Source: Vitrella brassicaformis CCMP3155 (Eukaryota > Protista > Chromerida). Taken from it: a stretch of DNA of 63,463 nt. The notes below the pieces were generated by a model. It was given only the letters and a program-made list of their open reading frames with translations. It was not told the DNA's origin and did not search any database. Position numbers and translations under genes: made by a program. Below, piece after piece: positions 6,508-63,463 of this stretch. The first letter of the stretch is position 1. Each line of letters starts with the position of its first letter. The stretch spans positions 1-63,463 of the forward strand of contig CDMY01000503.1 of NCBI GenBank assembly GCA_001179505.1. Reading direction: 5' to 3'.

Positions 6508-8792
6508 ATGGCAGGGGCAGTCGTGGAGCTGGGCGAATACATCGTCAGGGGTCAGTCAGAACGCGCAGAGCACAGCAACACAAGAAGGATGGACACGTGA
6601 GCCTTTCTTCCCTCTCTCTCTTCTCATTCTGTGTTGCATCTGCCCACCCACCCACCCATCCTCCTTCACTCACTCACTGTCCACACAGAGTCTCACAATC
6701 CCGAGAATCTGCATGCGGTCGAGTTGGCCGACGAGATGAACAACATCCTGACGGCCATGAAGCTGGCGTGCAAGGTCATCAACCGGGAGATATCCAAGGC
6801 CAACACATACGGGGTGGACACCACCAGGTCGGGGCTCGCAGAGGACATGCCCTCACTCGCCAACAGGCGCTTCCTCGACGCCATGGTCAACAGAGAGGTC
6901 AGTGAGTGAGTGGGTGAGTAGAGAGGGGGGCGTCCTGTGACCACGAATCGACTTGTGTGCCTTGCGCGTCTGTCTTAGGTGGTTGCGGGCATTGCCACAG
7001 CGTTCCTTGACGACTTTGTGGCCATCCCCAACTGCAAAAACAAGGGGTGAGGGGCAACCCAGGACACACAGCAGGCATGCACAGTGAACAAACAAGAAAG
7101 ACACTTCTGATGCTTTCTTTGTCTCGATCAACAGGTTGGTGCTGCTGATCCATCCGCTGGACGGCAGTCGGCAGATCGATCTCAACGTGTCGGTCGGGAC
7201 GCTATTCTCCATCTACAAGAGGTTAACACTGCGCAGCACAGCACAATGACACTTACGAGGGCCAAGGGGCCACGTATCGGGGTGTGTTGATTGATTGCTT
7301 CAGAGTGACCAAGAAGGGCGACCCCGTTGAGTTGCGTGACTTCCTACAGCCGGGGTGCAACCAGGTGTGCGCCGGATACGTCATCTATGGCTCATCAACC
7401 ATGATGGTATGTATCCCAAGCACACACACACACACACACACATGCTTAAAAGCAGCCCTTCCCCACTCTCTGTTTGGCCGCTGATATGTGCAGGTGTTCA
7501 CGATGGGCAAGGGCGTCACCGGATTCACTCTCGTGAGCAACTCATGCCATATGCCGACACTGACACCCCCCCTCACCCACACCTACTCATTGAGTCTCTT
7601 CATGGGCATGGGTGGGATGCGTGTGTGCATGTAGGACCCGAGTCTGGGGACGTTGTATCTGTCCCATCCGCGCGTCAAGATCCCCCAGGACGGCAAAATC
7701 TACTCGGTCAACGGCGGCAAACGCAGGAGATTCCCAAAGGGCGTCACCGAATACATCGGTAGGAGGGCAGGGCAACAAACACACGGACGGGAGAGCAGCG
7801 GATGGATGGACCCTATGTGTGTGAGCGTCTGTGTGTGATCAGATTACTGCCAGGATCGTGCATTCTCTCTGCGCTACATCGGGTCGCCCATCGCAGGTCA
7901 CCCACACAGGAGGGACCACAGGGGGGGAGCGAACGGTGGCTTCATGTGCCTGTGCACGTGTGCGTGTGTGTGGATCAGATTTCCACCGGAACTTGCTCAA
8001 GGGCGGCATCTACGTAAGATCGATGGACACATCGACATGGCCTTTCTGTACTGCCCGCCAGAATATTCAGCTATCTCCCTTTCTGTGATCCTTCCTGTGT
8101 GTTTAGATCTATCCCCCCGTGAGCCATCCACACACAACATCTGTGGCTGTCGCACCACACAACGCAAAAACCACACAGCCAACAATACCCTCTGTTCGTC
8201 GGCCATTCGTATTGTTTGTGTGCAGACGTTTGTGGACCCGAAGCCGTCTGTGTCGATGGTGTTTCAGTGCAACCCCCTCTCATTCCTTGTCGAACAGGCC
8301 GGAGGCAAAGCCAGCGACGGGTGGGGTGGGTGGGGGGGCAAACACGACACGGACGAATGGATGGATGCATTGTGGTGACCCTTGTATGTCATATCGATGT
8401 GTGTGTGTGTGTGTGTGTGTGGTGTCAGGTTCACGCGCATCCTGGACATCGAGCCGACGGCACTGCACGACCGCATCCCATTCATCTGCGGTGGGTCAAC
8501 GACTTGGGGCGTGTCGAGCCATTGCATGCATCCATTTGTGTGTGAGCGTCTGTGTCTGTGTGTGTGTGTGTGCGTCAGGGAGCCCACTGATGGTCGAGAA
8601 GGCCGAGGGTTTCATGGCCAGAAGTGAGCGAGACACACACAGATGCACACAGACACCCACAATCGATGGATGTAACGGATTCTGCTGTCGCGCCCCCCTG
8701 CACCTGTGTGTGTGTGTGTCTGTGTCGCAGAGAAGATGGCCGACGGTGGCTGGTGCTTCTCGAGGCAGCCGGCGGTCAACGGTAAGAAATGA
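6508..8792 (+). CDS. fbp: Fructose-1,6-bisphosphatase class I homologue (E. coli/Bacteroidetes-like lineage), probably catalytically inactive; about 14 exons
   Basis: Spliced product contains [23 protein letters not shown], [46 protein letters not shown] and [23 protein letters not shown], collinear with E. coli Fbp. No N-terminal targeting extension seen. Confidence 0.92.
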
Positions 8793-9361
8793 GGTGTCAG
8801 CCGCTCGTCCCTCTTCAATCCATTTTTCTCCGAAATGCAAGACAAGACGAGACGATGCGGCCACACATCCAATGGATATGCGGTGGCCTTGTGACGTGAT
8901 GCCTGGACTGGCAGGGAGGGAGGGATGGGGGAATGGAAGCCGAGTGCCTGTCGTGTGCACTTGTCTGCTGCCTATTTTTGACATGCATGCGAGCCTGTGT
9001 GCCATTACGTCTGTGTGCGTGTTGGAGGGCATTATTTCTCATCGGGGGGCTTATTTCCTGGCGTGGCGACAAGGGCATCGCGATGCGGTTGGGCGTGTCC
9101 ACGTTGGATAGTATGTGGCTGGCGAACCGACCTGTGTACAATTTTGACTGACTCAATGGACAGAGTCATGGAAAGCGTCACCACGATGTCCATCCAGTAC
9201 AGCCGATGATGACCGACCTAAAGGAAGACATAACGATGCCGAAATAATGCCTGACTGACTGACTGACTGCATCCAGCACACATCGGTCGATCAAGATAGA
9301 GGCACATGCACACTGCGAAAGCACATGCACTAATCGCCAACACCAGCACCAACACAAAAAC

Positions 9362-12300
9362 TTACTCTCCACTACCCTCCTCTGTCGGAGCAATCCCAAG
9401 CCACTTCTGTATCCTCTCTAATAGGCTCATGAAGAAGGGCGGCGACGGATTCGACAGCACATCTGACATCGGGGGCTTGGGAATGGCCTCAGTATGCAGG
9501 GTCGCCTCGGGGAACGCCCTCCTGAACCGCCTCAAATCTGTCATCAGAGCCTCTTTCTTCCTTCTGCGTCTCTCGTCAGGCCCTTCAGCTGTTCCCGCAT
9601 ATTCAGCCATGGCCTTGACCTTCCTCTCCTCCCCCTCTCCATAGAGATTCCTCCTCGTCCTCAGCGAGACCTCCCTCACAGTCGACATATCTTCGGTGCG
9701 GACTTCGAACATATCCTCATCTCGCTTCTGCCACTGCTGGGCGATGTGGTGGTCGTGTCTCCGCCTGAAGGCCGCCTGGCGAGTGTCCTCGGCTATGTCG
9801 GGCAGCCGTGTGGGCACGTAGATGTTTCTGGGCATGTGGTACTCGTATTCCTGCAGGTAGAGGGCGGCTGCATGCACTGCCAAGCGAGTCAGCTCCTGAC
9901 ACAGGCATAAACACAGCAGCAGGACAAGTAGGAGCTTCCGTGTAGCCCGTCTCTTCCAGGTCGTTACCTTGGTGGGGTCTTCTTCAGGCTGTGCCTCCTC
10001 TCTCTGTGGCAGCAGGCTCATGTCGGTGTCTCGCTCATCCGGGAACCGCAGCACACTGTTTGCCCATGCATACGGGATGCGGTGCCGCACGTCAGCGTCG
10101 ATCAGCTGCTCTACTGGCGTCTCTCCTCCCTCCTCACCCCCTTCATACGGTGCCGTATCCCCCTCGCCATCCCCTTCTTGTTTGAATCCCATGGGATCGT
10201 CGTGGTACAAATCACGTACATTGAGCATCACCTCGTCCAGGATGTCCCGCAGGGGAGACAGCACATCGTAGGATGGTGAGAGGCCCGCCGACTGCAGGTA
10301 TTCGACGTAAGCTTCCACACTGTCCATCGACCATATCCGCGGGTCCAGGGTCAGCCGCAAAAGACACGCAAACGCCTGTAGTTGATGAGTGAATCGCACA
10401 TATACAGCAGAGAGGGAGACATAAGGGATTGTGGTACCGACTCACCTTTTTCAGCTCCATTTTCGGCCCTGCGTTGTCAAGGGCATGCTGAAGGTTGTTC
10501 AGGGGACCTGAGCGCATACAAAGAGGGATGCAGCACATGAGTCGAATCGAGTATGCCGCAAGCGCACCTTGAGAGACGCCAAGTTTCTCGAGCACCACAA
10601 GGGCCTTCCTGCTCATCGGCCGTGTCCTGAGGTTCCACTTCAGCCTGGAGCCCCTCCTCCTCCATCAATGCCGCCGCCTGCTCGTCAATGCGAGTGGGCC
10701 ATTCTGCACCCTCTCCCTCCTGGCCTTCGCTGTAGAAAGGCAAATGGCCAGATAAATGAGACACTGAGATACAAGCCAAAAGGTGTCCTACGTCTGTATC
10801 AATGCCCTCGGGCATAAGCATTGGGGCGTCGGGGGCCAGGTCGACCTTGCGAATGGCCCTCCCGACATAGTGGAGATATGGCAGCCGCTCCAGCAGGCGG
10901 ACAACGATTCGTTGAGCGCGCAAGAGAAAGCTGCAAAAGAAGAGGAAGCCCAGGGGAGTGCGCTATGAAGTGTGTTCGACGCCGCTTACCCCATTTCAAG
11001 AGCTAGTGCGAGCACATGGGCTCCAAATACGGTCCAGAGGATGACGGCCACGGTGTAGCTGATGCCCTCCTGAGTGTGAGTCTGCCACGATAAGCTGAAG
11101 AAGAAACCGCCAAACTCGGCCGATATCAGACCAAACACTCGGCACCTGCTCGCATGGATCAAGAGACACAAACACGAAGAAATGGGTCGATACTAAGACT
11201 GCCCGCATGATGCACGTACCCTTCCAGAAGAGCCAGCAGATGACGGTGCATTGGGGCAAACGGAGCAATACTGCCGCACGGAAAGAAAGTACACACTCAC
11301 GTGTGCAGACCACTTTCGTATGCCTCACTTGATGAGTATGAGCGCATATGCGATGGTGAGTGTCATCCCCGCCACCCACTGTGCAGCCCTCCGCTCCTCA
11401 GAGTAGAACACCACTATCAGCAGCAGCCGGTGAACCAGGACGAGGGCTAGGTGAACTGGCCAGGCGGATACTCCTGGTAACCCTGCCACACCCATCCCAC
11501 AAATGCACGCCACCTGAACGAACACAGAACAGAAGGTGAGAAATCGTCTTCGCGTTTCGTTGGTTGTCGCTTTCCTTACTTGTCGTCAGCAGCCATTGTG
11601 TTGCGGTATCTGGCGAGGATGGCTATGTGTATGGTGGGAATGAGGACAGTCCAGATAAACAGGCCGGCGTACGCATAGGTGACCACTCCACCGTGGGGGT
11701 CCTGACCACACAACTGGACGGACAGACGGACAGCGAGACATGCTATCGGAGCATCTTATGTACGCACGTGTCTCTCTTTTCATCTTTACCCTGTCAAAAT
11801 CCGGCACTAAATGCACCTCATCGGTCGACGTCAGCCGCCGACAGCGAAACACCTCTATAAAATACCTGAGCAACCATAACAAACAAGGCCCGTCCGATTC
11901 ATACGAACAAGCAGTTGCGCACCTGGTGAGCATAGCATAGCACGAGTACAGGAGCAACAGGAAGGCCCCACACGTGACCACACGATACCTCAGCCTCTCC
12001 CTCTGACGCCTCTTCATACCCGTCGCCCCGCCACCCTCCCCCTCACCCCCAGCCTCAAGCCGCCGCCGCCTCATCCACTGACGCTCCTTACGCGCAAAGG
12101 GGAAGGCGAACGGAGGCACCAGGGGCGTCCCGGACTCCTTAATGGCGTGTCGAACGACATATGAAGATGCCACTGCTGCCGCCATGGCAGCAAGGGCAAG
12201 GGGAAAGAATGCGGTGATCTGGACTTTGGTCAGGAAGGGAGAGCCGCCATCCGACGGCTGCAGGGGAGACAAATGCACCTTAGTGAGAAAAACAGGTGTC

Positions 12301-15333: not shown

Positions 15334-15371
<38 letters not shown>

Positions 15372-46390: not shown

Positions 46391-46421
<31 letters not shown>

Positions 46422-46838: not shown

Positions 46839-46873
<35 letters not shown>

Positions 46874-48813: not shown

Positions 48814-50388
48814 TCACGAAGGGCTGCTGATCTTGCCCGCTGATGGACACAGCGAGCTGATCGGACACTCGCCGCACTTGGGTGACCGCGTCACGCAGAT
48901 GTTCTGGCCCAGGCCGATGAGAAGCAGCGGCAGCGGGATGCGCAAGTCCACCGGCACCCACCTGGAGCGCAGCGGCAACAGTACGCACACACAGTGATGG
49001 GTGCAAAGACAAGGAGATCGTCAGTGTCCGCCCTCTTTACCCTTCGAGCGCTTTGCGCGTCTGCTCGGCGTGTTTGGTGTTGCACCACTTCAGCCGGTTG
49101 GCCACCCGGTGTGCGTGCGTGTCAACGACGATGCCGCTGTCCTGCTGTCCAAACGACACGGACTGCACCAAGTAGGCGATCTGCACAAATAAATCGACAC
49201 ACGACACACAGAGTCTGCACTGGAGGGTGCTCTGCCTTCCTGGTGTGTGTGCTGACGTGACGCACCTTTGGTCCGACCCCCGGTAGCTCTTTGAGCGAGT
49301 TGGCATCGCTGGGCACCTGTGACCGATACCTTTCCTTGATCAGACGACCACACTCCTGCAGTGCAAACACACACCCAACTTGACACACACACTCAACTTG
49401 AAAATATATCAATGCACATGGGATGATGGAAGGACAGCTGACTGACGTCCTCTGCTTGCCTTTATGTGTTTGGCCTTGGTCTTGTAGAAGTTGCACTGAC
49501 GCACACAATCCTCTATGTCATCCAGAGGAGCCTCCTGAACACACACACCACACACGGCCACTCTCGGCCCGTGGACCACCTGTTCATCTAAATTAAAGGA
49601 CTGCCTGTGTAGAAACATACGTACGTATATGAAGTCGACATTGACATCCCCGCCAGGCGATCTGTCTTTGAGCGTCTGCATGGCCCTGAGGGCCACCTCG
49701 TCCCTGCACTGCACCGACAGGATGCACGCCACCAGAGCCGTGAAGTGCGGCGTCGACACGCCATCAGACTGAAGGCCGACGAGAAAAGCGTGGAAGTCAT
49801 CGACCGTCGCTGCATTCTCATATCGATACTCCTGCAACCTTTGCACACACACACACAGACAGGAAGGAGAGATGCTGCCGGTCACGCGCATACACAAATG
49901 CATGTGTTATGCTCTCACTTGCTAACGATTTCCTTCCAGTTGTCAGGCGCCGCCGAGTCGTCAAGTGGCTCGAGGCTGTCCACGTCGATAGAGAAGTTCT
50001 TCTCCCGCAGCCGATCACGCTCCGACAACACTGAGCTCCCTGCACACGCAACACACACGGCACACCGATGCATGCTGTCGTCCATCGATGCGGAATGCCC
50101 TATGCACTGGTGAGATCTACACCTACCCTTGTCGGCAGCCTTCGGCATCTTTGGCGCACTTGCCTCCTCCTCCTCCTCCTCCTCCTCCATCTGGACCGTC
50201 AGCTTCTCCGCCTTTGGCTTCGCTGGTGACCCACTGCCGCCGCTCCTGTCTGTTCTCGCCTTCTTCAACGGCCGCCTGCCCAGAGATCTATCTGACGGCT
50301 GCGGCGGGTCGCCTCCCTTTTGGTACGCAAACTGCGCGAAGAAATCATCCAGCTTCCTGCTCTCTTCACCATTGTCCCCGTCGTCCAT
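48814..50388 (-). CDS. NTH1: Endonuclease III-like DNA glycosylase/AP lyase (HhH-GPD, 4Fe-4S)
   Basis: LVACILSVQCRDEV, NFYKTKAKHIK, HhH LKELPGVGPK|IA with the catalytic Lys, VDTH with the catalytic Asp, and the Fe-S motif C-X6-C-X2-C-X5-C (CVTRSPKCGECPISSLC). Acidic/basic N-terminal extension. Confidence 0.95.
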
Positions 50389-50595
50389 TGTCTGTGTCAA
50401 AACGATGGCAATCCGGCTCACCGCCAGCTTTCGGGTTCCACATTCCGTAAAACCGCTCTCTCTCTCGCAAATCCCTGCCACTCACTTTCCCCCCCAGTGG
50501 ACTGCGTCGTGAGGATCCAGTGTGTTCTGCACTGAACCTGCAGTGGTAAAACGTCTGGCTGTTTCCCTTTCCCTGGCCCCAAGTCGCTGGAGAGG

Positions 50596-52336
50596 ATGGG
50601 TGTGGACGATGAGGTTGACTTTGTGGAGGGCGAGATGGAGGTGGACGAGGCCGCGGCCGAGGGGGGGCAGCAGGAGGAGGAAGAGGAGGAGATACCCGAA
50701 CTCACCGAGGAAGATATCATCGACCGGTCAGTCAGCCAGCCGCGTGCAGGAGACGGGGGAACACACAGACAGACACAGCGGGCGGGTGGAGGGAGAAACG
50801 TATGTGTTCATTGGGTCATTTGTCTCCCCTTTTGTCTGTCTGTCTTTGTCTGCTTGTCAGGCTGAATGTGGAGGATTTGCTTGAGGAGGGCATGGAGGGG
50901 GTGGGGGAGTTCTTTGTCAACTCGTCCAACTTCGTCCGCATGGGCTTGGTGCCTGCGGATGAGCCCGAGAGCGAGCCGCTGGCCTTCAAGTACTTCACCA
51001 AGCAGGAGGCCATGCAGGAGGTCCAAAGAGTGGGATTCAACTCAGACTGGCACGAACACTCGGACGTCCTCAAGGTGGGTCACCGGTATGAGCCACAGGC
51101 GGACAGAAAGAGCAGCCCTTTGGTGTCATCAGAAATGGTCGTTGGAGCACCTGCTGCTGATACGTGACCCCAACCGCATCTACGGGCAAAACTACGCCTG
51201 GCCACACACACCCAAAGCGTTTCAAATGCTCAAACAAGTATCAACCAGAGAGGGGTTGCCGTCAATCTGCGCCACAAAGCCTGGTCTCTCTCCTTCGGTC
51301 AGCGGATAGACGAGTTGAAGCAGAAGGTGGTGGACGACTACTATGCGCAGATGAAGGGCGGCCGGGCTGGGGAGGGGGAGGAAGAGGCAGAGGGCGCCGA
51401 AGCCGTCGATGAAGATGCCCACATCGTGGTCAAGGACGAGCCCATCGCTCCCCAGCCATGGCAATCCGACACGGCAGAGGAGACGGCTCGTGAGGTGGCT
51501 CTGCTGCATCTGCCGGGGGAGGAGGGTGTGGATGGTGGCAAAGTGAGCCGGCGTCGGTATAAGGTGGTCATCAGCAGGAAGAGACAGCACTTCGGTGCTC
51601 AGATGCGGTTCAACGACTCTGCTGAGAACATCCACTCGTGCAGGCCGCAGAAGGACCCCAACTACGCCCTTCATCGGAAGGAGCTCCACCTGGGCATACA
51701 GGCGGTGCCCACCTACTGCCAGCAGAACACACAGACACCCTGGTTCAGACCTGTCAACTCCAGCTCACAATACAACTCCGATGACTTCCTAGTACACTGC
51801 ACATATCATCCATCAGCAATCCAATCCGCTGTCCCGCCCACAAGACCCACAGACACGTATGCCCCCTCTGTTTATTGGTGCGTGCAGAATCAGGATTTAT
51901 ACAGCGAGAAGGAGCTTGAGAGACTCAATGAGTTCCTGTCGAGGGTGGCTTGGGGGTGAGTGAGTGACTAAGGGGCAGACAGGAAGGAAACAAACGGTCG
52001 CGTTGGCGCCTCGTTTGGCCTTGTGTCAGTGTGGAGGAGGCTCTGCAGCAGAATGAGACATTCGACATATACCAAGACGAATTTGCTAACCTAGGTCGGC
52101 AGACACACCGAGCCCATCCGTCGATATGTACATACGTCTCTCTCACTCTTTCCTGTGGTGTGGTGTGCTCAGGTGATGATGATTTGGGTGTTGGTGCTCG
52201 CAGTTCAGCGAGCATTCGCGAGGTGCGCAACTTCCACGATTTGACCTACTCGAAGTCAAAGCTGCTGGCGTCCATCGACTGGCTTCCGGGGTGGGCGGGC
52301 ACGCGGCTTGTGTGGATTGCCGGGAGAGACATGCAT

Positions 52337-52370
<34 letters not shown>

Positions 52371-55031
52371 TGTGTGTGCAGGTCGACGACTATCGTGGCT
52401 GTGTCATGCATCGAGAATATGACGTTTGACGAGCAGGCTGAGCTGTCGGGCAAGGTATATAAGGCCAGGAGCATGCCCCTCTGCTCATGTGTGGATGAAT
52501 GGTGTGTGCCAGGGTAACACGGCTGTGGTGCTAGTATGGTCATTTCACGACTTCATCATCCCCCAAGCCGTCCTCGTCTCACTATCGGTCCGCACACACA
52601 CATACAGACACGAGTGTGTAGCTCCCTGGATGTGTGGGTGTGTGCAAAATGCAGGATGTGAGTGTGATTCGTTTCAACCCCCAGACGCCAAACCTCCTCA
52701 TTGGCGGATGCAACTCGGGACAGGTGCACACCTGCACACGCGACATATGGTGCACAAGTCTGTATGGATGGTATCTCCTTGCGTATGTGTGGGTGTCGTG
52801 TGTGCAGCTGGTGATGTGGCGCATCGACAGTTCGCTCATCGGCGGTGCGGGTGGCCAAAACGTCTCAAGACAAAACACCATTGAGGACGACAGATGTACG
52901 TATGCGTGGATGCGAGCAATGGAGGAGGAAACTCACAGGAAAGGCGGCCTGTCTGTCTGTCTGTCTGTCTGTCCGTTCTCTATTCAGCTGGCGGCATTCC
53001 CCATGTGCATCAGCTGATCGCCTCCTCGATTGACGAATCGCACAAGAAAACCGTCACCGGCATACAGTCAGTCAACACACCACACACAGCAAATCCATTC
53101 ATCCATCCATCCATCCATCTCTCTGCGCCTGGCTGACTGATGGTCCCCTGTTTTGTCTGTGCACACACACAGGTGGGTGCCTGAGGGCATCGAATTTGAG
53201 AAAAGGGGCCGAGTAAGCACACATGACACACACGGCCACCACCGGAGGATGGCGTGGTGCATCCCTGATAATGATGTTGTGTCGTGTAGATGTCTTACAA
53301 GAAGGAGTCTGTCGGCCTCAAGTACGTGATATCCATCGCAGGCGACGGCCAGCTGCTCATCTGGGACCTCAACCAGGCCCTGCAAAATGTCAGCAGTGCA
53401 CAGAGATGACCCTCTCCATTGACACCACACGCACGGCTCTGTGTGTGCCATCACATCAGTACAGCGAGCCGGATTTCGTGTGGAGGCCAATTTTTCATGT
53501 GCAGCTGCAGAGACAAGACTCGGGTACACTACACGCACGTTGCTGGCTGGATGGATGGATGGATTGTCCATCCAATCCACCTATTGGTTGGTTTAGGTAC
53601 CGAGATGGGCTGCTGTGACCTGCTGCTGCCCCACTGCGACCCGGCCGACTTCTCGTGCTACTTCATCAGTGCGACGGTACACACACACACACACGCAGAG
53701 CTCAGGGTGAGAGACATGGTCTGCAGATGCGTCTCGTCCCTGTGTGAATGCATTAATGCGTGTGTAGGAGGAGGGCGAGCTCATATACGGCGACTGGGGG
53801 GCCAAGGGAGAGGAGGACAGAAAACCCGAATACGTCAAAAAACTCCTCAAGGCAACAAAGAGCACACGAGAGATACACACACACACAACTCAAGCGCCAG
53901 ACGGCCTTACCTTGTTCACCTACTGTCGACCATCCATCCATCCATCAGGCGTCCAAGTCGTTTCGCCCTACGGTTGCGCTGGAGCGGTCCCCCTTCTTCC
54001 CCTCTGTGATGCTGACGGTGACCGACTGGGCATTCTACCTCTGGCGGGAGGGGACATCACACCCAATATTCACCTCGCAAAGGCAGGGCCCCACCCACAG
54101 CACTGCACATGAGACGAGACACACACTCGGCGACATATGCGTCTCTCTCTCTCTCTGTGTGTGCAGTTCTCCATCTCATTTTGCGACTGGCGTGTGGAGC
54201 ACCTCCCGGCCCGGCGTGTTGTATTTGGGCCGGATGGACGGCATTTTGGAGATATGGGACTTCTGCGACCAGTCGCACAAGCCCTCACTCACGCACACAG
54301 TCACCTCCGTCGCCATCACGTCACTCGCCTTCCAAAAGACCTCCAAGAAGCCAGACGCACTCGCACAGCTGGTGGCTTCAGTCGGCAGAATCATTGCCTG
54401 CCTGCCTGGACGGACGGATGTGTGTATGTGTGTGTGTGTGGGTGCATTGCAGGCGGTGGGTGACGAGAACGGCAACCTGCACATCCTTGCCCTGCCCAAG
54501 AACCTCACCAAACAGGTCAGTCAGTCAGCCTGCCTGCCTGCCTGCCTTCCAGGGAGACGCACAGACACAAATTATATATGTCATGTTTGCGGGTCGGTGT
54601 GCGTGCAGGCTGGCAACGAGATGCGTACGATGTCGGATTTCTTTGCCCGTGAGGACTCGCGCGTCGAGTACTGCCAGGCCAAACTCACCGACCTCAGACA
54701 GGTCGAAACACACCACACACACCCACACCCACACGAGACACCCCTCCCTCTGTGTGTGTGTGTGTAGATGGCTGAGGAGTTGGAAAAGAAGAAACAGATG
54801 GACGGAGAACTCATGGAAATCACAGAAATCGTAAGCAGCATGCGTGTGTCACGCTGTGCCATGCTGTTCGTGCGCCTGTGTGCATGTCATGTTGTCTGTC
54901 ATGTGTGTCCTCAGCGGGACGATGAGGACAAGTTGCTGGAGAGGGCGGAGGCGGAGTACAGGGCGCTTGAGAAACAATTCAAGGAGGCACTCGGGCTCTC
55001 TGACGAACCGCCCAACGGGGGCACACAGTAG
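50596..55031 (+). CDS. DNAI3: Axonemal inner-arm dynein intermediate chain, WDR63/DNAI3 (IC140) type, WD40; about 20 exons
   Basis: VEEALQQNETFDIYQDEF, IRFNPQTPNLLIGGCNSGQ, SIAGDGQLLIWD, ERSPFFPSVMLTVTDW, WSTSRPGVLYLGRMDGILEIWDFCDQSHKP, VGDENGNLHILALPKNL and a C-terminal coiled coil. The subfamily call is from motif recall. Confidence 0.85.
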
Positions 55032-56089
55032 ACACACACACGCAGGCAGGCAGACAGGCTCACGGCCATGCCATGGACGGGCTGGTTGTTTGAATCAATC
55101 CATCGATGTGATGTCTGTGTGTATGGTTGCATGATCGATTTGACAGACAGACGTGTAGCTGGGCTGGTACATGTCTGTCTGTCTCTGCGTGATTGAGCGC
55201 TTGACGTGACGACTAATCAGTTACCTTCCCCGCCCACTCATTGGTGTCCCCAGCTTTTTGTGTGTGTGTCAAACCATGCACATGATGCAAAGATGACCAA
55301 TCAAAGCGTTCCCAGCCGCCGTCCGCTATGCATTCCAGTCAGTCAGTCGGCCAGTGGGCCAGTCAGTCAGTCCAACCCCTCCACCCCACCCCACACACAC
55401 AGATGGGCAAATGGCAGCTATACCACTCCACTCCACTCCACACACGCCACAGATGAAGGAAGGAAGCCAGCCGGACACGAAAAAGAGTCAGTAGGGGAAG
55501 AAAGAGACTAGAGTGAGTGAGTAGAGTAGAGCAAGTGAAAGACCCCTCCCACTCTCTCATGAGACCAAAAACACCGCTCTCGACAGACAGCCAGCCAGCC
55601 AGCCAGCCTCTAGCTAGAGCAAGTAGACACCCCAACGAACGAACACCCACCCACGATCCATCCAGCCATGCAGCAAGTCGTAGCACTTGAAAAATCAATT
55701 GCCCGACCGGCCCGGCCCGCACGTTGGTCATCTTGTCCTTCCCTCACTTGGACCTCACTTGGAGAGGCCCAGTCTGAAGAGGCCCGCCCAGTCGGGTCCA
55801 AGCGAGGCACACAGACCCACCAACGTGCAGGCGGTAGTGTGAATGAATGGCTATGAATCAGTCAGTGTATATAATGCCCCAAACCGCCGCGGAAGAACAG
55901 CCAACAAACACTTGACAGCCACGCGTCGCACCACACGCCACCACACACACATGGCAAGACGAAACAAGACACGGGCAGCAATTCGTAGGTAGGTGTGTGT
56001 AGTAGATAGGAAGTGTGACTGACGCGGTGGTTTGGCGTCTGTCTGTGTTTCTCTGTATTGTATGTGGCGGGCCGGGTGTGGTGTTAGAT

Positions 56090-57108
56090 TCACTTCTTGG
56101 GCGATGCGGCTTTCCTCCGCTCGATGTACGGCTCCAACTTCGTCTGCAGATCCTCTGCACACACAACACAATCACACACGCGCCGCAGAGACATTCATGA
56201 CACGTTGAGGGGACCAGTCCATTCCATCCACTGCTGTGTGTGCGCTGAGCGTACGTACCATCTTCGATTTCGATGGCTTCCTGTCTGACTTCCTCCAACT
56301 CGGCCAAGCTCATGTCCTCATACGTGAACTTGCCAGTGGCCCTGTCGNNNNNNNNNNNNNNNNNNNNNNNNNNNNNNNNNNNNNNNNNNNNNNNNNNNNN
56401 NNNNNNNNNNNNNNNNNNNNNNNNNNNNNNNNNNNNNNNNNNNNNNNNNNNNNNNNNNNNNNNNNNNNNNNNNNNNNNNNNNNNNNNNNNNNNNNNNNNN
56501 NNNNNNNNNNNNNNNNNNNNNNNNNNNNNNNNNNNNNNNNNNNNNNNNNNNNNNNNNNNNNNNNNNNNNNNNNNNNNNNNNNNNNNNNNNNNNNNNNNNN
56601 NNNNNNNNNNNNNNNNNNNNNNNNNNNNNNNNNNNNNNNNNNNNNNNCCCCCCCCACACATCCATCAAGCTGTCTACCTGCGTCCAATAATGCGTTGGTG
56701 TCGTTCGAGTGCGCGATCGCTCTCCCAGAAGGAGTCGCGTTTGTCGTCGCCCGTCTTGCTGCCCGTGGCCCCGATGATGGACACAGGCGTGGCACCCGCC
56801 ACGTCAGCAGTCGTCACATCGGCGTCCTCGGCCTTGTGCGAGTGAGACACCGTCACCCCACCACCTGGCTTCAAATCACCGATCTCTGTCATAGCGCATG
56901 CACACACAGACAGACAGGAGAGGGAATATGCGACAGGGGTGCGTGTTCATCGTGTTGGTGATGCGTGTGTGTGTGTGTGTGTACCCTCTGGCCGCATAGA
57001 GCTGAGTGTGACGCTGCTTCGGCGGCCACCGCTGTCACGGCGCCCGCTGGCGGCACTGCTGTCAGTGGCACCACTCTCACGACGATCTGCACACACCACA
57101 CCGCACAA

Positions 57109-57140
<32 letters not shown>

Positions 57141-57953
57141 AGATACAGACTGCTGTGTCCCAACCTGTTTCTCTCCCCCCCCCGGACCATCTTCGGTATC
57201 CTTCTTGGAGTCCTCAACGCGTTCCAGCGACTGTGTGTCGCGTATGGACTCGACGTAGTCGTCCTGGAGTGTGTCGAGCTCCTCCTTGGACAGACGAATG
57301 AACCCAGTGGGGTGACGGTTCTTGATCAGCGACCCGCGCCGCTGCCGGCGATTCGGGTCGTCAAAAGTGGGATCCTCCAAACGGTCCTGCACACACACAC
57401 ACACCAGCATTGCATTCACAGGGGAGGGCAAGCCAAGGGGCATAGCGTAGCTTGTGCCTCTCACGACAGAGACAGACGGACATACATACGTGTATTTCTT
57501 CTGCCCCGGCGAATTCGACGCTGCTGCCGTGTCTGACGTAGAAGCGCTGACCGTGCGGCCCCACCAGGCGGCCGGGGCTGCCGGGCGAACCGTCAGGCTC
57601 CAGCCGCTGACGAACACTGACAATGAAACACACACACACACACACACATCACAGGGATGCTTGGGCTCCTCCATCCATCCATCCATCCCTCCTTGTGTCT
57701 ATCCATCGGTGGCTGGCTGACCCAGTGGTAGGTTGCGCAGAGCCAGTGGTGGGTGACTTGGCCGATGACCGTCCGGTAGAGTCGTCCATCTCGCTCTCGT
57801 CCTCGTCAGCACCTCGGTTCTTGGCCGTGTTGTGCTCCGTCACCATGTCCGACGAGACGGCCAAGTGGATGAAGCCAGTGGGGGTGCGCTTCACACCTGA
57901 GGCAGTCAGTGGACCACATAGACACACATAGCGAATGTGGCGTGACCTCCCTA

Positions 57954-57986
<33 letters not shown>

Positions 57987-60900
57987 TGGGCTGACTGACT
58001 GACCGCCTTTTTCCCCGGTGCCTTCCTGTGCGTCGATTTGTACGCCCTTTTGTTTCTTGATGAGTGCGACGGCCTGTTTGATGGGCATGACCTGGCCGTC
58101 AACGATGACCTCCTGGCTGTCGTCCTCCAGCTCCTCCTCAGTGTTGTACACACGGTCTCGCTCGTCGCCGTCCAATCCCTGAAAGGTGTGGTCGCTCGCT
58201 GATTGATGTGATTGATGTGACGTAGCCATCACATCACACGCACACACAGTCAGACACAGACAGACAGACAGACAGACAGAGAGTGGGTGAGAGAGGGTGA
58301 TGCGTGTGTGTGTGTGTGTGATGTGCACATGTATACATTTGATGCGAATGAATCCAGTGGGTCGTCTGGTCTTCAGTTTGGATGGCTTCTCCTCCTGCTC
58401 CTCCTGACTCCCTGAGGCTGATCCACATACATATTATCACACACACACACAAATCGTATGGACTACCTCATCGTGCATGCTGTAGTCTGTCCTCACTGCC
58501 TGACCTTTCTTTGACTGACCTTTGACTTTTTCCTTAGCCCCCTGTCCGATGACGGAGGCCTGGCTGTCGAACTGCAGGTTGCCGCCGCCAGCCTTGCGGC
58601 TGATGGCCTCAGTGATGACCACCGGCACGGAGCCGCCGGGCCCCTTGGATGGGCCGGTGATGCCGAGCCCCACGTGCTGCGCCTGCTGCAGCTGCACCTG
58701 CTGACGCACCTGGGCATCTTGCTGGGACGGGGGGCCCTCCGATGTCGGTGGCGACCCGCCCTTGGGGAACTCCTGCAGCTCCTCCAGCTGGGACCCAGAT
58801 CTGTGGGGACCCATACACACATACACACACACCGATGGAGGACACAAGAAGGAAATAATGGCTGGCTGGTGGTGTCGTTGTCACGTACCGGAATGCGACG
58901 CGCTGTTGTCCCCTGGGTGTTCTGCGGCCATCGGCGTCGGACGCCTGCAACTCGTTGGGCGGCACCGGCAGCAAACTGAACCGAGGAACGAATGAACGAA
59001 TGAATGCATCACACACCCACACATAAATAACCTGCCCATACATGTCTCGTGCGTACCCCTCGGCAGGGACAGCAGGTGCGGGTGATGGTTCGCGCACCCC
59101 GTCGCCCGGCGCCGCAGCGGCCCTCTGCTGGCCACCACCCTGCTGCTGCTGCTGCATGGCGAGCCCGGCGGCCTGTGGGAAGCCGAATAGCGGGTGAGGG
59201 ACCATGGGAGCCATCATGGGCATCATGGGCATCATCATGGCGGGGTTGTACCCCGGGGTGGCGTGTGGCGGTGGGGGGAGGTTGTAGTTGTAGTTGAAGT
59301 GGAAATTGCTGTTGGGCTGCCCAGGGCCGGGGGGGCTGTTGTCGCTGCCCGGAGAGGGCGAGGCGTCGAGTGCGAATGGGAAGGGCGAGTAGGGCGGCTG
59401 GGGGGGATACCCCAAGGCGTCCTCCTCTGGGATGGGCTCGTTCGTCCCCATCGCTGGGCCGCCCATCATACCCATTGGGGCGCCATACATCAACTGAGGA
59501 ACAAACACAACACAACATCAGCAGTCGGTGTCTCTTTCCCTCTGCTTTGCCAGTGATCTCATTGGCTGCCAACATACATTTTTGCCGTTGCGTCCCGGCG
59601 CCCCGGCCCGCTGCTGTCCGCCCTGCACGGCCTGCTGCCCCACTCTAGCGGCCTGCACGTCGCTGGGGAGGTGGTAGTGGTAGTGGTACTGGTATGACGC
59701 GCTCCGCTGGTCCTGCCCGTTGGCCGCCCCCAGGCCGTTGGCGCCCATGTCCTCCTTGGCGGGCGGCAGCTGGCCCTCACGACCCGCCGGACCAAAGGGA
59801 CGGGGCACTGAACGCGGCGACGAGAGGGGCGATGCACCGAAGTCGATGAGGTTGAGGTCCAGGTCGGGGTAGGCGTAGTTGGAACGATTCGCAAACACAC
59901 GACGGCTCTGATATATTGACACACGGAGGAAGCGAAATACAATCAATGGCTGGTGTGTCTGTCGGCTGTCTGGCTACAGTACAGTCAGTGGCTACTGACT
60001 GACTGACAGACAGACCTTGAAAGGGTAGCTGTATGCTTGCATGTGAGGAGACGCGCTGCTGGATCGCCTGCGAGGAATCTCGTTGCCGGCGCTCAGAGAG
60101 AGCGGCTGGTGGGGGTGCGGCGGCGGAGGAGCTATGTCAAACAGCCCACCGGGCAAACTGCGCCTGTGTATATATATTGCAGACAGACAGACAGACAGAA
60201 GGTGAGGATGAATGGGATGGCATGGGTTCACCACACCGACACATCGGTGGGTACAGTACCTACCGGCGGGACTGTCCGTTGTCGTCTGCCGCCTCCCCCT
60301 GTGAGAGGTTGGCGATCATCTGCTCCACGCCCGCACGACGCTGCAACAACTTGCCGCTCTGAAGGCACACACACACACACACACAGACACAGACACATGC
60401 GGCAGATGACTGACCTACGTGGCTGTGTGTGGGTGTCGATTGGTGTGAGTTGGTGTGCAGTGTTGTGGTGCAGTGCAGTGCAGTGCGGCCGGACCATACC
60501 ATCCAAGAAGCCGTGACGAGAAGCTGCTGCAGTCGGGTGATGAAGGCGTGCAGACAAAACAATATCGCACCCAACTCCTGCACAACAAACAAAGAAACGC
60601 CCACACACGTGTGTGGTGCATCCCTTAATGCATCCCTCCCCGCCTTGCCCGGCTTCTGGACCTTTGATTTCTCCAGCTCCTGGTCTGGAAATCTGGCGAC
60701 CTCCTGGAACAACGCCTCGTTGAAATGCTTGCTGTGGACAACACACACACACACACACACACACGAGTGAGTTGAGTCGCTCGTTGTGCGGGTGTGTGTG
60801 CCCGCCCATATCTGTTTCCTTCTTACATGCCCTCGCTGGAGAGTTTCTGTATGTATGCCAACTCAGTTGCGAGCTTGAGGATGGTTAGCTGGCTCTGCTG

Positions 60901-61323
60901 GAAGTTCTCGATGCTGTAAAACGACGTGCCGCGCAGCGGGGCGTGGCTCAAGTTGTACAGGTCCTGATACAGTAGACACACAAGTGAAGTTGGACACACA
61001 CGACACGACATGACACACAGATTGATTGATTGACATACACACGAGCGGATGGATGACGTGAGAATGCACGCCTCTCCCTCCCTCCCTCCCTCCCTCCCTC
61101 CCTGCCCGGCTTGTTGTCTCTTTATTTCCCTGACCTTGAGTCTGTCTTCTATGGGTCGTTCCTCTTCCCCAATCACGCGCTGCCCCGGGACGTTGGTCGA
61201 GGTCACAGGCGGGGGCGACGAGGGCATCGAGGGGCCGGCTGGCGGCGGGCTGCCCTCACCACCACCAGACGAACCCTTGGCGGCCGGCGCTGCCGGAGGA
61301 GGGGCCTTCCCACGGCTCGACAT
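56090..61323 (-). CDS. Large hypothetical low-complexity protein (at least 15 exons, spans a gap); small N-terminal helical region, then Pro/Gln-rich and acidic regions
   Basis: Start MSSRGKAPPP at 61323; exons LYNLSHAPLRGTSFYSIENFQQ, HFNEALFQEVARFPDQ and ELGAILFCLHAFITRLQQLL; ends ERRKAASPKK* at 56090. It could be two genes; not all junctions were checked. Confidence 0.55.
56348..56647. other. Assembly gap (300 N) inside the minus-strand gene
   Basis: Directly visible; a C-run lies on the right flank. Confidence 0.98.
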
Positions 61324-62200
61324 GAGCTGCTCGGGCTATCCAACGAAGAAAAAGGCGCACCGGATGCTCCTCTCACTCGAATGAATGCTCCTGTGACTCG
61401 TGCGCGTCGTAGAAAACTGCTGCCCTGAGGGAAGCTTGCATACCCTTTGCGAGCTTTGAACTCGCAAGATTTGGCACAAGGAAGGAAGTGTTGGGAGAGG
61501 ATGGCTGACCTCCCGGTGTGTATGTGACGCCACTGGGTTTTCTCATCTGGACAAAACTGGCCTGACTCGGAAGAGGACTGGAGATCTTTCAGCTTCAACC
61601 CCCCCTGTGGCGTTGGTTGAGGACAGCAAGCAAGGTGGGCAGACAGACACACGACACCTGGGGGAGGGGGCAGGAGGGGCGAGGGTGGGCGCTGTGACGA
61701 GAATGGGGGACTGATGAGATGGTCTCGCGTGTGTCCGTTGTGTTGCTTGCTGCAGGGAGGGAGGGATCTTTGAGTGAGGACGGATCAGCTAAGGTGGGTG
61801 ACACATAAGAGGAAGGGGTGCGCCCCGCCGGTGGGGTCAGTTTGGCATCACGTCTCTCGCCGCTCTGCGTTGTGTGTGTTGCAGACACGTGTGTTGTGTG
61901 TCAGTCAGTCAGTCGGTCGGTCATCGGTGGCTGCCAACATCCCATAGTGCTCTCTGGACTAGTCTGAAATAGCACCTCTCTACCTCTATCTACCGACCTA
62001 GCTTCCTACCTGTCTGTCTGCCTGCCTGCCTGATCCTCTGTTTCCCCCATCCATCGGCGTGGCCTGCCCTTATCGCTGCGTTGCGTGGGTTCATCCTTTC
62101 CTTGTCTCTCTCTTATTTCTATCGTTCCATCGTCCCTTCCCTCCATCCGCCCGCCCCGCCCGCCCTTTCGGCCGGTAGCGGAGTGTGGGGGGTCCGTGCG

Positions 62201-63463
62201 ATGCCTGTGCCCCTCCCGTCTCACCTCTCGCCCACTATCAACCTCCCTTCAGCAGGATCTATCTGCCAACAAGACGACAAACAGCAGCAGCAGCAGCAGC
62301 AGAGCCAGCAGCAACAGCAGGCAGCTATAGCAGCAGCAGCGAGTGGCGGCGGCGTGACGCCCTTCTCGTGGGAGAGACAGGCCAACAACCCCTCCTTCAT
62401 ACCCATGGACTTTCAGTCACAGCAACAGCAACAGCAACAGCCTCCCCGGGGTGCGGGCGACACGGGCAACCATCGGCAGCCAGCGGGTGCGTCCCCCAGC
62501 CACACAAACAGCTCGTCCAGTTCGGCCACCGGGGTGATGCAGCCCTTCACCGGCCCACCACACACGGGCTCATCCCACAACGGCACTACTGGCACCCTGC
62601 AGCAGCAGCCGCCATCTGGTGGTGGAGGTGGGGGTGGTGACCATGACCGACAGCAGCTGCTCCTCGATCTACTGGCGGCCGGGGGCGCGGGCGCACTCGG
62701 AGGCGACAACAATCACCAGCAGCAGCAGGACATCACCACTACCGACAGGGCCACCGGTGCCATCCCCCCGGGGCTTGACCTGGATGCGCCCGTCGAGCGG
62801 ATCACTGCCCGTCAGCTGCTGTCTCTGCTGACCGAGGCGGCCAAGGCGTCCTCAAGCCCCCAGCCGCCGGCCATCGGGCAGCAGCAGGGATACAGTGGTG
62901 CACAGACGACCGGCTATATGCAGCAGCAGACACTGCAGACCGAAGGTACACACACACACATGCCACACACAGATACAATGTCAATGTGTGTGTGTGTGTG
63001 TGTCAGGCGTGTCGTCTCTGGCGCCAGGATCAGGCCTGGGTCGAGGCCTTCGGCCGCTGCAGTCGGCTGGGCGTCCAGGGCAGGCGCCCACGGCCCTTTA
63101 CGTGGACCCCTGGACGCCCACCGCCCCGGCCTACACCACCGAGCCACCGCCCCTGATGGCCACGCCACCCAACGTGGCCACCGGGGCTGGCGGACTCACA
63201 GCCAGGCCATGGCATGGGACACCCGCAGGACAGAAGCGCAAGGATCAGACACCCATGGTCAGTCAGTCAGCACACAACAGAGGCAGAGACAAGACAACGG
63301 GTAGAACACGGTGGCCATAGTATGTCTCTCCCTGTGTGTGTGTGTGTGTGTGTTGGGTTTAGGAGGAGTTTCTCAACAACGATCGCTACGCGGGCAGCAG
63401 TGCCACCCCATCAGCATCGCAGCAGCAGGTGTATGCCAGTGGCACCACCACCACCACCACCCC
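62201..63463 (+). CDS. Gln/Gly/Pro-rich protein, 3'-partial (possible regulator N-terminus)
   Basis: Exon 1 to 62945 with poly-Q runs, intron 62946-63006, exon 63007-~63257, and next exon from ~63363 (EEFLNNDRY). The start could also be MDFQ at ~62405. Confidence 0.6.

What the first reader, a model, noticed from the sequence alone, without database searches (positions are those of the whole stretch)
8624..63006. Self-complementary microsatellite introns: (AC)n after the donor, (GT)n before the acceptor - candidate structure-guided splicing system
Seen: many short introns carry a CA-type repeat right after GT and the complementary TG-type repeat right before AG, usually in place of a polypyrimidine tract. 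Examples: 62946-63006 (GT-ACACACACACACA...TGTGTGTGTGTGTGTGTGT-CAG); 54702-54767; 53677-53767; 8624-8730 (GAGACACACACAG...CTGTGTGTGTGTGTGTCTGTGTCGC); minus-strand 56886-56984 and 58199-58336. I rarely saw the reverse order (TG then CA) inside introns. Known: fish introns with 5' AC and 3' GT repeats fold into hairpins that bridge the splice sites and reduce dependence on U2AF2. Inference: an alveolate may have evolved the same mechanism independently, possibly genome-wide. Counter-examples exist (the intron near 22050-22136 has CA only; many have TG only). TG upstream and CA downstream of an exon could also pair across it and promote skipping or circularisation.
Basis: partly seen in the sequence, partly recalled or inferred. 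Interest (0 to 1): 0.85.

Follow-up and report, generated by a model that had tools for sequence, protein, structure and literature searches.

The report
Polarised CA/UG repeats in Vitrella introns
In this alga (Vitrella brassicaformis) short introns are CA-rich at the start and UG-rich at the end, where a pyrimidine tract normally sits, but the two repeats occur independently of each other, so a fish-like hairpin splicing system is possible only as a by-product and is not shown.

Summary
The window is contig CDMY01000503.1 of Vitrella brassicaformis CCMP3155.

**Observation: confirmed.** I tested it on 54 transcript-verified GT/GC-AG introns (median 86 nt).
- AC hexamer within 40 nt of the 5' splice site: 19 introns. 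Reverse orientation: 5.
- GT hexamer within 40 nt of the 3' splice site: 37 introns. Reverse orientation: 2.
- Along the intron, A falls from 33% to 9% and T rises from 11% to 44%.
- The UG tract ends a median of 11 nt from the acceptor, in an AG-free zone, where a pyrimidine tract would be.

**Hairpin interpretation: only partly supported.**
- Both arms co-occur exactly as chance predicts: 13 observed, 13.0 expected.
- Long arms never coincide: 0 observed, 1.8 expected.
- An intron's own arms pair no better than arms swapped between introns.
- Predicted folding energy is only 6% better than dinucleotide shuffles (mean z -0.49).

**Best reading.** There are two independent positional composition rules. 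The U/G-rich tract acts as the pyrimidine-tract equivalent. Bridging hairpins arise incidentally in about a quarter of introns.

**Context.**
- Introns meeting the fish definition are about tenfold commoner here (24% against at most 2.3%).
- They are absent from Amoebophrya orthologues.
- I found no published report.
- The scan noted the same pattern on at least ten other pieces of this genome. None that I saw was followed up.

The parts
46846..61392 (.). Stretch covered by spliced transcript contigs L002 and L003. It holds four genes on alternating strands and 53 transcript-verified introns: 49 GT-AG and 4 GC-AG.
   Evidence: DNAI3-like protein P0001 maps exactly with 22 introns
54702..54767 (+). 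Both-arm intron (66 nt): CA-rich 5' part and a 15-nt (TG) run abutting the acceptor.
53677..53767 (+). Both-arm intron: 16-nt (CA) run directly after GT, short TG run before AG.
56886..56984 (-). Both-arm intron: 18-nt CA run after the donor, with TCTG/TG tract before the acceptor.
58199..58336 (-). Both-arm intron (138 nt) with imperfect CA arm and TCTG/TG arm.
60732..60826 (-). Both-arm intron with a 24-nt (GT) run. It is one of the few with MFE z below -2 and a predicted bridging stem.
57897..58003 (-). Intron with a 29-nt CA arm but only a 7-nt TG run. It shows that long arms are not matched. It starts with the donor motif repeated in tandem (GTCAGTCAGTCAG).
57087..57187 (-). UG-only intron: 24-nt TG run before the acceptor and no CA arm. 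This is the commonest class (24 of 54).
52291..52381 (+). UG-only intron: (CT)n followed by a 26-nt (GT) run abutting CAG.
51238..51302 (+). Intron with neither repeat (11 of 54 are like this). Its 3' end is still U/C/G-rich and A-poor.
56342..56677 (-). Intron that contains the assembly gap 56348-56647. The flanking exons are joined in the transcript.
61635..61884 (+). Two plus-strand introns (61635-61755 and 61794-61884) seen as joints in RNA contigs.
9896..11219 (-). Five annotation-derived introns of the 507-aa gene P0151. Their 3' tracts are more ordinary and U/C-rich, with few repeats, which shows heterogeneity between genes.
62946..63006 (+). It has GT..AG ends and a frame-compatible downstream ORF, but my RNA evidence does not cover it.
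8624..8730 (+). It has GT..AG ends and was not RNA-verified here.

Best explanation
These are ordinary U2-type GT/GC-AG introns of Vitrella brassicaformis. They are short (median 86 nt) and follow two independent positional composition rules.

**Rule 1 (shown).** The last 40-50 nt are A-poor, AG-free and U/G-rich. Most often this takes the form of (UG)n or (UCUG)n microsatellites that end about 11 nt from the acceptor.

**Rule 2 (shown).** The first 40 nt or so are U-poor and A/C-rich. In about one third of introns this takes the form of (CA)n-type microsatellites that start about 14 nt from the donor.

**Inference from position.**
- The U/G-rich tract is the 3'-splice-site-proximal recognition element, equivalent to the polypyrimidine tract. 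It lies in the AG exclusion zone between branch point and acceptor.
- AC/GT is the genome's dominant slippage-prone repeat class.
- Only the U-containing orientation is kept at the 3' end. Only the orientation that does not mimic that signal is tolerated near the 5' end.

**Consequence.** The two ends are complementary as classes. About a quarter of introns can therefore form an end-bridging CA:UG stem. That stem is a by-product, at most an optional helper, and not the device that defines these introns.
For: **Intron set.** 54 transcript-verified introns.

**Composition.**
- Gradient along the intron: A 33->9%, T 11->44%, C 31->15%.
- GT hexamer near the 3'ss in 37 of 54 introns against AC hexamer in 2. 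AC hexamer near the 5'ss in 19 against GT hexamer in 5.
- UG tract ends a median of 11 nt from the 3'ss. T+G is at least 60% of the last 30 nt in 45 of 54 introns. The longest pyrimidine run has a median of only 5 nt.
- AG observed/expected is 0.29 in the last 35 nt, and the nearest upstream AG is a median of 48 nt away.

**Independence of the two arms.**
- Both arms: 13 observed, 13.0 expected. Spearman correlations of arm strength are 0.06 and -0.16. Long-long pairs: 0 against 1.8 expected.
- GT-only introns (24) greatly outnumber AC-only introns (6).

**Folding.**
- Native against swapped arms: -21.5 against -20.8 kcal/mol, p 0.65.
- MFE z -0.49.
- Class-level complementarity: 5'x3' arms -21 kcal/mol, against -14.5 for 5'x5' and -13.4 for 3'x3'.
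- More long-range pairs than shuffles: 12.1 against 7.7.

**Repeat class and gene-to-gene variation.**
- AC/GT runs dominate the dinucleotide repeats: 47 + 41 runs, against 5-12 runs for each AG/CT-type unit, 3 for AT and none for CG.
- A gene elsewhere in the window has more ordinary U/C-rich tracts in the same place.
Against: - No binding or functional data exist. That the UG tract is read as a pyrimidine-tract equivalent is inferred from position only.
- The CA enrichment near the 5' end is left explained only by a tolerated-orientation argument. GT dinucleotides are not depleted there (observed/expected 1.14), so simple avoidance of decoy donors does not explain it.
- The sample is 54 introns from about five genes in 15 kb. 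A weak coupling (odds ratio up to about 3-4) would not have been detected.
- In fish, the same positional signature is experimentally tied to pairing (PMC4691745).
Confidence: 0.5

Rival explanations
1. Fish-like structure-guided splicing. In the introns that carry a CA arm (about a third), CA:UG pairing bridges the splice sites and functionally helps or replaces U2AF2-type recognition. On this reading the mechanism evolved convergently with teleost (AC)m-(GT)n introns.
For: - The positional signature matches that of zebrafish.
- 24% of introns meet the published definition, against 0.09-2.29% in fish.
- The both-arm subset (n=15) has MFE z -1.44 and 17.3 bridging pairs against 7.4 in shuffles.
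- Nearly every 3' end is UG-rich, so any CA arm finds a partner without needing extra co-occurrence.
Against: - There is no co-enrichment (13 against 13.0), no long-long pairs (0 against 1.8) and no arm-length correlation.
- Swapped arms pair as well as native ones, and end-to-end distance in the MFE structure is unchanged from shuffles.
- Two thirds of UG tracts have no CA hexamer partner.
- Pairing across exons is equally available (10 against 11.2 expected).
Confidence: 0.2
2. Two separate protein-binding elements. CA repeats near the donor act as an hnRNP L-type intronic enhancer. UG repeats near the acceptor are bound by a dedicated UG-binding RRM protein (TDP-43 or CELF type) rather than by U2AF.
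For: - The two tracts occur independently, each at a fixed distance from its own splice site.
- From established knowledge, CA repeats bind hnRNP L and UG repeats bind TDP-43 or CELF proteins in animals.
Against: - No protein evidence was obtainable here.
- The tracts are degenerate: UCUG, UUUG and CU runs serve in the same place. This fits a loose U-rich, A-poor requirement better than a sequence-specific site.
- In animals, UG tracts at 3' splice sites are usually inhibitory.
Confidence: 0.12
3. Largely neutral by-product. A high AC/GT slippage rate in non-coding DNA produces the repeats. The only selection is against A and AG in the branch-to-acceptor zone. The tracts carry no positive signal.
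For: - Strong AG exclusion (observed/expected 0.29).
- Repeats are 8- to 18-fold denser in introns than outside them.
- Tract length and presence vary a lot between introns and between genes.
Against: - AG avoidance alone would equally allow C-rich or CU tracts, yet T+G reaches 71% of the last 30 nt.
- It does not explain the U depletion (11-14%) and the CA excess at the 5' end.
Confidence: 0.15
4. Long (UG)n tracts fold into pUG quadruplexes that mark the introns or transcripts.
For: The pUG fold needs about 12 GU repeats (abstract of bioRxiv 10.1101/2025.10.28.685102). A few tracts reach that length.
Against: Only 3 of 54 introns have a TG run of 24 nt or more. Most tracts are 6-15 nt.
Confidence: 0.03

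Closest known systems
Teleost and lamprey (AC)m-(GT)n structured introns (Lin et al. 2016, Genome Res, PMC4691745)
   Same: AC repeats lie just downstream of the 5' splice site and GT repeats just upstream of the 3' splice site. The repeats stand where the pyrimidine tract would be. They are complementary and predicted to bridge the intron when both are present.
   Different: - In fish the arms co-occur far above independence, long with long. Here they are exactly independent.
- Fish introns are about one third more stable than dinucleotide shuffles. Here the gain is 6%.
- In fish the class is 0.09-2.3% of introns. Here 24% meet the definition, and 69% carry the GT arm alone or together with an AC arm.
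- Introns here are about 86 nt long, in a protist.
- No functional test exists here.
Amoebophrya introner elements with 8-20 nt inverted repeats joining intron ends (Farhat et al. 2021, PMC7789003)
   Same: This is also an alveolate lineage in which the 5' and 3' ends of the same intron are complementary and predicted to form a hairpin.
   Different: - Amoebophrya elements have non-canonical splice sites, direct repeats at the borders and repeated families, like transposons.
- Vitrella introns are canonical GT/GC-AG and show no family similarity beyond simple repeats.
- The Amoebophrya DNAI3 orthologues show no AC/GT polarity.
Atypical (GU)n 3' splice-site tracts of single human genes (apoA-II intron 2; the CFTR exon 9 (TG)m(T)n tract). 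Recalled from my own knowledge, not checked in a paper here.
   Same: A GU repeat occupies the position of the pyrimidine tract next to an acceptor.
   Different: These are isolated cases, usually weakening the site and needing enhancers or relief from TDP-43. Here it is the majority architecture of a genome's introns.
[quoted passage not shown] 1995, as cited in PMC4691745)
   Same: Intramolecular pairing shortens the effective distance between splicing signals.
   Different: The yeast helices are specific to individual introns, are not simple repeats and were demonstrated by mutation. Nothing of that kind is shown here.

Membership tests
(AC)m-(GT)n structured introns (Lin et al. 2016) | AC-repeat hexamers peak just downstream of the 5'ss and GT-repeat hexamers just upstream of the 3'ss | tested here: met
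   AC within 40 nt of the 5'ss in 19 of 54 introns (GT there in 5). GT within 40 nt of the 3'ss in 37 of 54 (AC there in 2).; anchored profile.
(AC)m-(GT)n structured introns (Lin et al. 2016) | AC and GT arms co-occur across the same intron above independence (long with long), and not across exons | tested here: not met
   Both arms 13 against 13.0 expected (odds ratio 0.99). Both at least 10 nt: 0 against 1.8. Spearman 0.06 and -0.16. Across exons 10 against 11.2. Whole window: one long-long neighbour pair. Power is limited to strong coupling.
(AC)m-(GT)n structured introns (Lin et al. 2016) | Markedly more stable than dinucleotide-preserving shuffles (about one third in zebrafish), forming a distinct structured class | tested here: inconclusive
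   All 54: -25.1 against -23.6 kcal/mol, mean z -0.49, 8 with z below -2. Both-arm subset: z -1.44. Native arm pairs equal swapped pairs.
(AC)m-(GT)n structured introns (Lin et al. 2016) | Repeats obscure or replace the polypyrimidine tract | tested here: met
   Longest pyrimidine run in the last 40 nt has median 5; longest [TG] run has median 9. The tract ends a median of 11 nt from the 3'ss.
(AC)m-(GT)n structured introns (Lin et al. 2016) | Splicing depends on the pairing (disruption and compensation) and not on U2AF2 | not testable with these tools
   Needs minigenes, structure probing or U2AF2 depletion.
Canonical U2-type spliceosomal introns | GT/GC-AG termini, with an AG exclusion zone upstream of the acceptor | tested here: met
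   50 GT-AG and 4 GC-AG among the 54 usable introns. AG observed/expected 0.29 in the last 35 nt.
Introner or MITE-like intronic elements (Amoebophrya, Micromonas, Aureococcus type) | Introns fall into sequence families with terminal inverted repeats and direct repeats or target-site duplications | tested here: not met
   All-against-all blastn of the 54 introns gives only 15-30 nt low-complexity matches. The arms are generic microsatellites that are interchangeable between introns.
pUG-fold RNA quadruplex | About 12 or more consecutive GU repeats | tested here: not met
   Only 3 of 54 introns have a TG run of 24 nt or more. There are nine such runs, in either orientation, in the whole window.

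The most novel reading that the evidence does not exclude
The class-level complementarity is itself the selected feature. On this reading Vitrella uses a degenerate CA:UG 'zipper' to pair the two ends of its short introns. It would have evolved convergently with teleost (AC)m-(GT)n introns, but be used genome-wide with reduced dependence on a U2AF2/pyrimidine-tract interaction. The lack of co-occurrence excess would then follow simply from nearly every 3' end already being UG-rich.
Probability: 0.18. Interest if true: 0.8.

Novelty: new variant of a known kind. Interest (0 to 1): 0.6.

Why it matters
**Taxonomic reach.** A positional AC/GT repeat signature at intron ends has been described only in teleosts and lamprey, where it affects at most about 2% of introns. 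Here the same signature appears in a photosynthetic relative of apicomplexans, at about ten times that frequency. A UG-type tract also replaces a recognisable pyrimidine tract in most introns.

**Two consequences, whichever mechanism holds.**
- Vitrella must recognise 3' splice sites through a U/G-rich, A-poor element. This raises a testable question about U2AF large-subunit specificity, or its replacement, in chromerids.
- The case is a natural control for the fish model. It shows that the polar signature can exist without arm coupling, so the signature alone is not evidence for structure-guided splicing.

**Practical point.** These tracts break short-read assemblies: contigs end at them. They also leave long spurious ORFs, which misled my simple ad hoc gene finder.

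Tried and rejected
**Home-made gene finder.** I wrote a dynamic-programming gene finder using codon or position-specific models plus short splice-site matrices. It recovered only 6-10 of the 13-16 confirmed introns exactly and drifted on self-training. I did not use it for any statistic.

**Coding-score strand map and ORF composition table.** Neither separated the strands. Repeat-rich introns contain few stop codons, so long ORFs occur in all frames.

**Pfam on 30 long ORFs.** This gave only three hits (DUF7630, LITAF, FBPase_C), because exons are short.

**tblastn with P0001.** It missed most exons. I replaced it with exact-match chaining.

**Comparison with the sister chromerid Chromera.**
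- Homologue searches with DNAI3 and the HhH-GPD protein returned no Chromera genomic protein.
- P0171 sits on an intronless contig.
- The question of whether the trait is shared by chromerids therefore stays open.

**Transcript walking leftwards and from P0151.** Neither found further transcript contigs, so RNA-verified introns come only from 46.8-61.9 kb.

**Paper search.** One search was wasted by a too-loose term setting.

**Explanations considered and rejected.**
- Introner or transposon origin of the arms: no families.
- pUG folds as a general explanation: tracts are too short.
- The annotation-free AC->GT order as proof that CA is localised to the 5' end. Once the UG tract abuts the acceptor, that order is partly forced by geometry. 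The anchored profile and the intron-based counts were needed to show the CA enrichment itself.


Full report
**Identity and evidence base**

The window is the complete contig CDMY01000503.1 of assembly GCA_001179505.1. A protein it encodes is named by NCBI as coming from Vitrella brassicaformis CCMP3155. The accession falls in the range given for that genome by Woo et al. 2015 (PMC4501334). GC content is 56%. AC and GT runs of at least 4 units (47 and 41) far outnumber every other dinucleotide repeat.

RNA evidence came in two steps.
- Laying RNA-derived contigs on 56700-62690 gave 13 junctions. All have GT..AG ends on their strand.
- An exon of a dynein intermediate-chain-like gene led to the organism's own 871-aa protein P0001. 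P0001 maps exactly to 50596-55028 with 22 uniquely placed introns.
- Looking up where P0001 is encoded returned two spliced transcript contigs, L002 (Logan ERR558152) and L003 (JGI 3300017297).
- L002 aligns to 46846-61392 in 54 blocks. That defines 53 introns: 49 GT-AG and 4 GC-AG.
- These include three introns I had predicted beforehand from the transcript length (336 nt in sum) and an open frame.
- With the two plus-strand introns, and without the intron that contains an assembly gap, 54 introns were analysed. Their median length is 86 nt and the range is 58-171 nt.

**Assembly gaps**

The transcript joins 56344 to 56677. The gap 56348-56647 therefore lies inside a minus-strand intron, and the sequence on both sides is continuous in the mRNA. 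The gaps at 39435-39734 and 41178-41477 lie outside my RNA coverage and remain unresolved. No tract pair or intron in any count spans an N.

Yes.

AC..GT is its own reverse complement, so the order can be tested without knowing gene strands. For neighbouring tracts of at least 3 units, the counts are as follows.

| Gap between tracts | AC->GT | GT->AC | Binomial p |
|---|---|---|---|
| 60 nt or less | 34 | 7 | 2.5e-5 |
| 100 nt or less | 39 | 13 | 4.1e-4 |
| 150 nt or less | 43 | 33 | 0.3 |

At the larger gaps, pairs that span exons come in and symmetry returns.

This order is partly forced once the GT tract abuts the acceptor, so I also counted on the verified introns, using the definition of the fish paper.

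| Hexamer and place | Introns (of 54) | Reverse orientation | p |
|---|---|---|---|
| AC within 40 nt of the 5' splice site | 19 | GT there: 5 | 0.004 |
| GT within 40 nt of the 3' splice site | 37 | AC there: 2 | 5.5e-10 |

The repeats are the visible part of a steep composition gradient. Dividing each intron into fifths, A falls from 33% to 9%, C falls from 31% to 15%, T rises from 11% to 44% and G rises from 25% to 32%.

Further support:
- Repeat hexamers are 8- to 18-fold denser in introns than in the exons and UTRs of the same stretch.
- Over the whole window, 65 of 110 tracts of at least 4 units, read in the UG sense, have an AG within 10 nt downstream. Only 23 have one within 10 nt upstream.
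- Anchoring on those 65 acceptors shows a CA-hexamer peak 50-100 nt upstream, where TG hexamers are rare.
The other two have GT..AG ends but lie outside my RNA coverage.

**What stands at the 3' end**

- The UG-type tract ends a median of 11 nt from the acceptor (interquartile range 4-15).
- T+G makes up 71% of the last 30 nt, and at least 60% in 45 of 54 introns.
- The longest uninterrupted pyrimidine run in the last 40 nt has a median of only 5 nt. The longest [TG] run has a median of 9 nt.
- AG dinucleotides are at 0.29 of expectation in the last 35 nt. The nearest upstream AG is a median of 48 nt away, which is more than half the intron.

It is degenerate. UCUG repeats, CU runs and U-rich G-containing stretches serve in the same place. 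The five annotated introns of another gene (P0151, 9.4-11.3 kb) have more ordinary U/C-rich tracts.

**Are the two arms coupled?**

No, within the power of 54 introns.

| Test | Result |
|---|---|
| Both arms present | 13 observed, 13.0 expected; odds ratio 0.99, Fisher p = 1 |
| Classes | GT only 24, AC only 6, neither 11 |
| Both runs at least 8 nt | 7 observed, 6.9 expected |
| Both runs at least 10 nt | 0 observed, 1.8 expected |
| Spearman, longest runs | 0.06 |
| Spearman, dinucleotide loads | -0.16 |
| GT arm upstream and AC arm downstream of the same exon | 10 observed, 11.2 expected |

In the whole window only one neighbouring pair of tracts of at least 5 units each has the intron-like AC-to-GT order and spacing. 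It lies at 62948-63003.

A strong, fish-like co-enrichment is excluded. A weak one (odds ratio up to about 3-4) is not.

**Folding (ViennaRNA)**

- Native introns average -25.1 kcal/mol, against -23.6 for dinucleotide-preserving shuffles. Mean z is -0.49 and median z is -0.26. Eight introns have z below -2 and one has z above 2 (Wilcoxon p 0.02).
- Zebrafish (AC)m-(GT)n introns are reported to be a third more stable than such shuffles.
- The polarity does redistribute pairs. Pairs between the first and last 40% of the intron number 12.1 against 7.7 in shuffles (p 3e-4), at the expense of local pairs.
- The graph distance between the two intron ends is unchanged (12.9 against 12.6).
- The duplex energy between an intron's own 5' and 3' arms (-21.5) equals that of arms swapped between introns (-20.8; p 0.65).
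- 5'x3' combinations are much better than 5'x5' (-14.5) or 3'x3' (-13.4).
- The complementarity is therefore a property of the two classes of ends, not of partners tuned to each other.
- The 15 introns with both hexamers have z -1.44 and 17 bridging pairs. The others are indistinguishable from shuffles (z -0.13).

**Most likely mechanism**

Shown:
- canonical GT/GC-AG introns;
- an A-poor, AG-free, U/G-rich 3' segment in nearly all of them;
- a U-poor, A/C-rich 5' segment, with CA repeats in about a third;
- independence of the two.

Inferred:
- The U/G-rich tract is the recognition element next to the acceptor, equivalent to the pyrimidine tract.
- AC/GT is the genome's main slippage-prone repeat class.
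- Its U-containing orientation is retained at the 3' end. The opposite orientation, which does not mimic that signal, is what survives near the 5' end.
- CA:UG stems then arise in about a quarter of introns as a by-product, and perhaps help.

I put this reading at about 0.5. The rivals are a functional fish-like bridging role for the CA-bearing subset (about 0.2), separate sequence-specific protein sites (about 0.12), and an essentially neutral by-product of slippage plus AG avoidance (about 0.15). pUG quadruplexes are marginal, because only 3 of 54 tracts are long enough.

**Comparison with what is known**

- *Fish and lamprey introns.* Lin et al. 2016 found the AC/GT signature mostly restricted to teleosts, and also present in lamprey. 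There, (AC)m-(GT)n introns are 0.09-2.29% of introns, with co-enrichment across introns but not exons, and with experimental dependence on pairing. By the same definition, 24% of the Vitrella introns qualify. The co-enrichment criterion fails and the stability criterion is met only weakly. The case shares the signature but should not be filed as a member of that class.
- *Amoebophrya introners.* Amoebophrya has introner elements with inverted repeats that join the intron ends. These have non-canonical splice sites and direct repeats and behave like mobile families (PMC7789003). The Vitrella introns show no families.
- *Orthologues as a control.* The DNAI3 orthologues were put through the same pipeline. 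They came from Amoebophrya A120 and from the assembly with the neighbouring accession, which is probably strain A25 (my inference). They have 18-21 introns of about 220-240 nt, flat composition, and 0-1 repeat hits. The trait is therefore not general to myzozoan alveolates.
- *Chromera.* I could not obtain a Chromera locus.

**Novelty**

Full-text searches found no paper that describes this architecture outside vertebrates.
- Searches combining Vitrella or Chromera with intron, repeat and splice terms found nothing.
- A search for repeat-bracketed introns in protists found nothing.
- None of the other 17 papers in the library that cite the fish study reports it.
- The chromerid genome paper mentions intron number and size only.

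Within this scan, at least ten first-reader notes on other pieces of the same genome describe the same pattern. I did not test those places, and none that I saw had been followed up. They suggest that the pattern is genome-wide but are not independent evidence.

**Verdict**

I class this as a new variant of a known kind: polarised AC/GT repeat introns in a protist, at high frequency, without arm coupling, and with the UG tract as the dominant, partner-independent element.

Noticed in passing
48122-48200(-), 50727-50860(+), 54516-54608(+), 57897-58003(-): Four introns begin with the donor motif repeated in tandem (GTCAGTCAG...), and 11 of 54 start with GTCAG. This offers alternative 5' splice sites 4 nt apart, which would shift the frame. 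It looks like a (CAGT)n microsatellite seeded on the donor consensus.
   Followed up: partly
47970-48047(-), 49356-49459(-), 53852-53948(+), 54083-54166(+): Four of 54 transcript-verified introns (7%) use GC-AG instead of GT-AG.
   Followed up: partly
46846-61392: A single 9.5-kb RNA contig (L002) runs through four genes on alternating strands: 354 aa (-), HhH-GPD 349 aa (-), DNAI3-like 871 aa (+) and 1028 aa (-). This implies overlapping or abutting UTRs, including a convergent pair within 54915-56155. The NCBI models for two of these genes differ in length from the transcript ORFs (389 against 354 aa; 1043 against 1028 aa).
   Followed up: no
57188-61325 (-): A gene of about 1028 aa encodes a strongly low-complexity protein rich in Q, G, P and A, with repeated short motifs (for example HYHYH and NFHFNYNYN). 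It has no Pfam family on record.
   Followed up: no
whole window: Repeat-rich introns contain few stop codons, so stop-free ORFs of 120-440 codons occur in all six frames (for example 53757-54764 runs through five introns). A simple ORF- and codon-based gene finder of my own failed here.
   Followed up: yes
56952-56991, 57096-57149, 57614-57700 and others: Short-read DNA and RNA contigs of public runs end at the intronic AC/GT tracts. The three N gaps of the contig may have the same cause; one of them is inside an intron.
   Followed up: partly
L008 and L010 (Amoebophrya DNAI3 loci): Only 3-5 of about 20 inter-exon gaps have GT/GC..AG ends within 3 nt. This agrees with the published abundance of non-canonical introns in Amoebophrya.
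   Followed up: partly
14346-20082 (-) and 20302 onward (+): The annotation shows two Lig_chan (ionotropic glutamate-receptor-like) genes of 507 and 385 aa, next to an 889-aa Ion_trans/cNMP-binding channel gene. This stretch has few AC/GT tracts and lower GC content (0.49-0.50).
   Followed up: no
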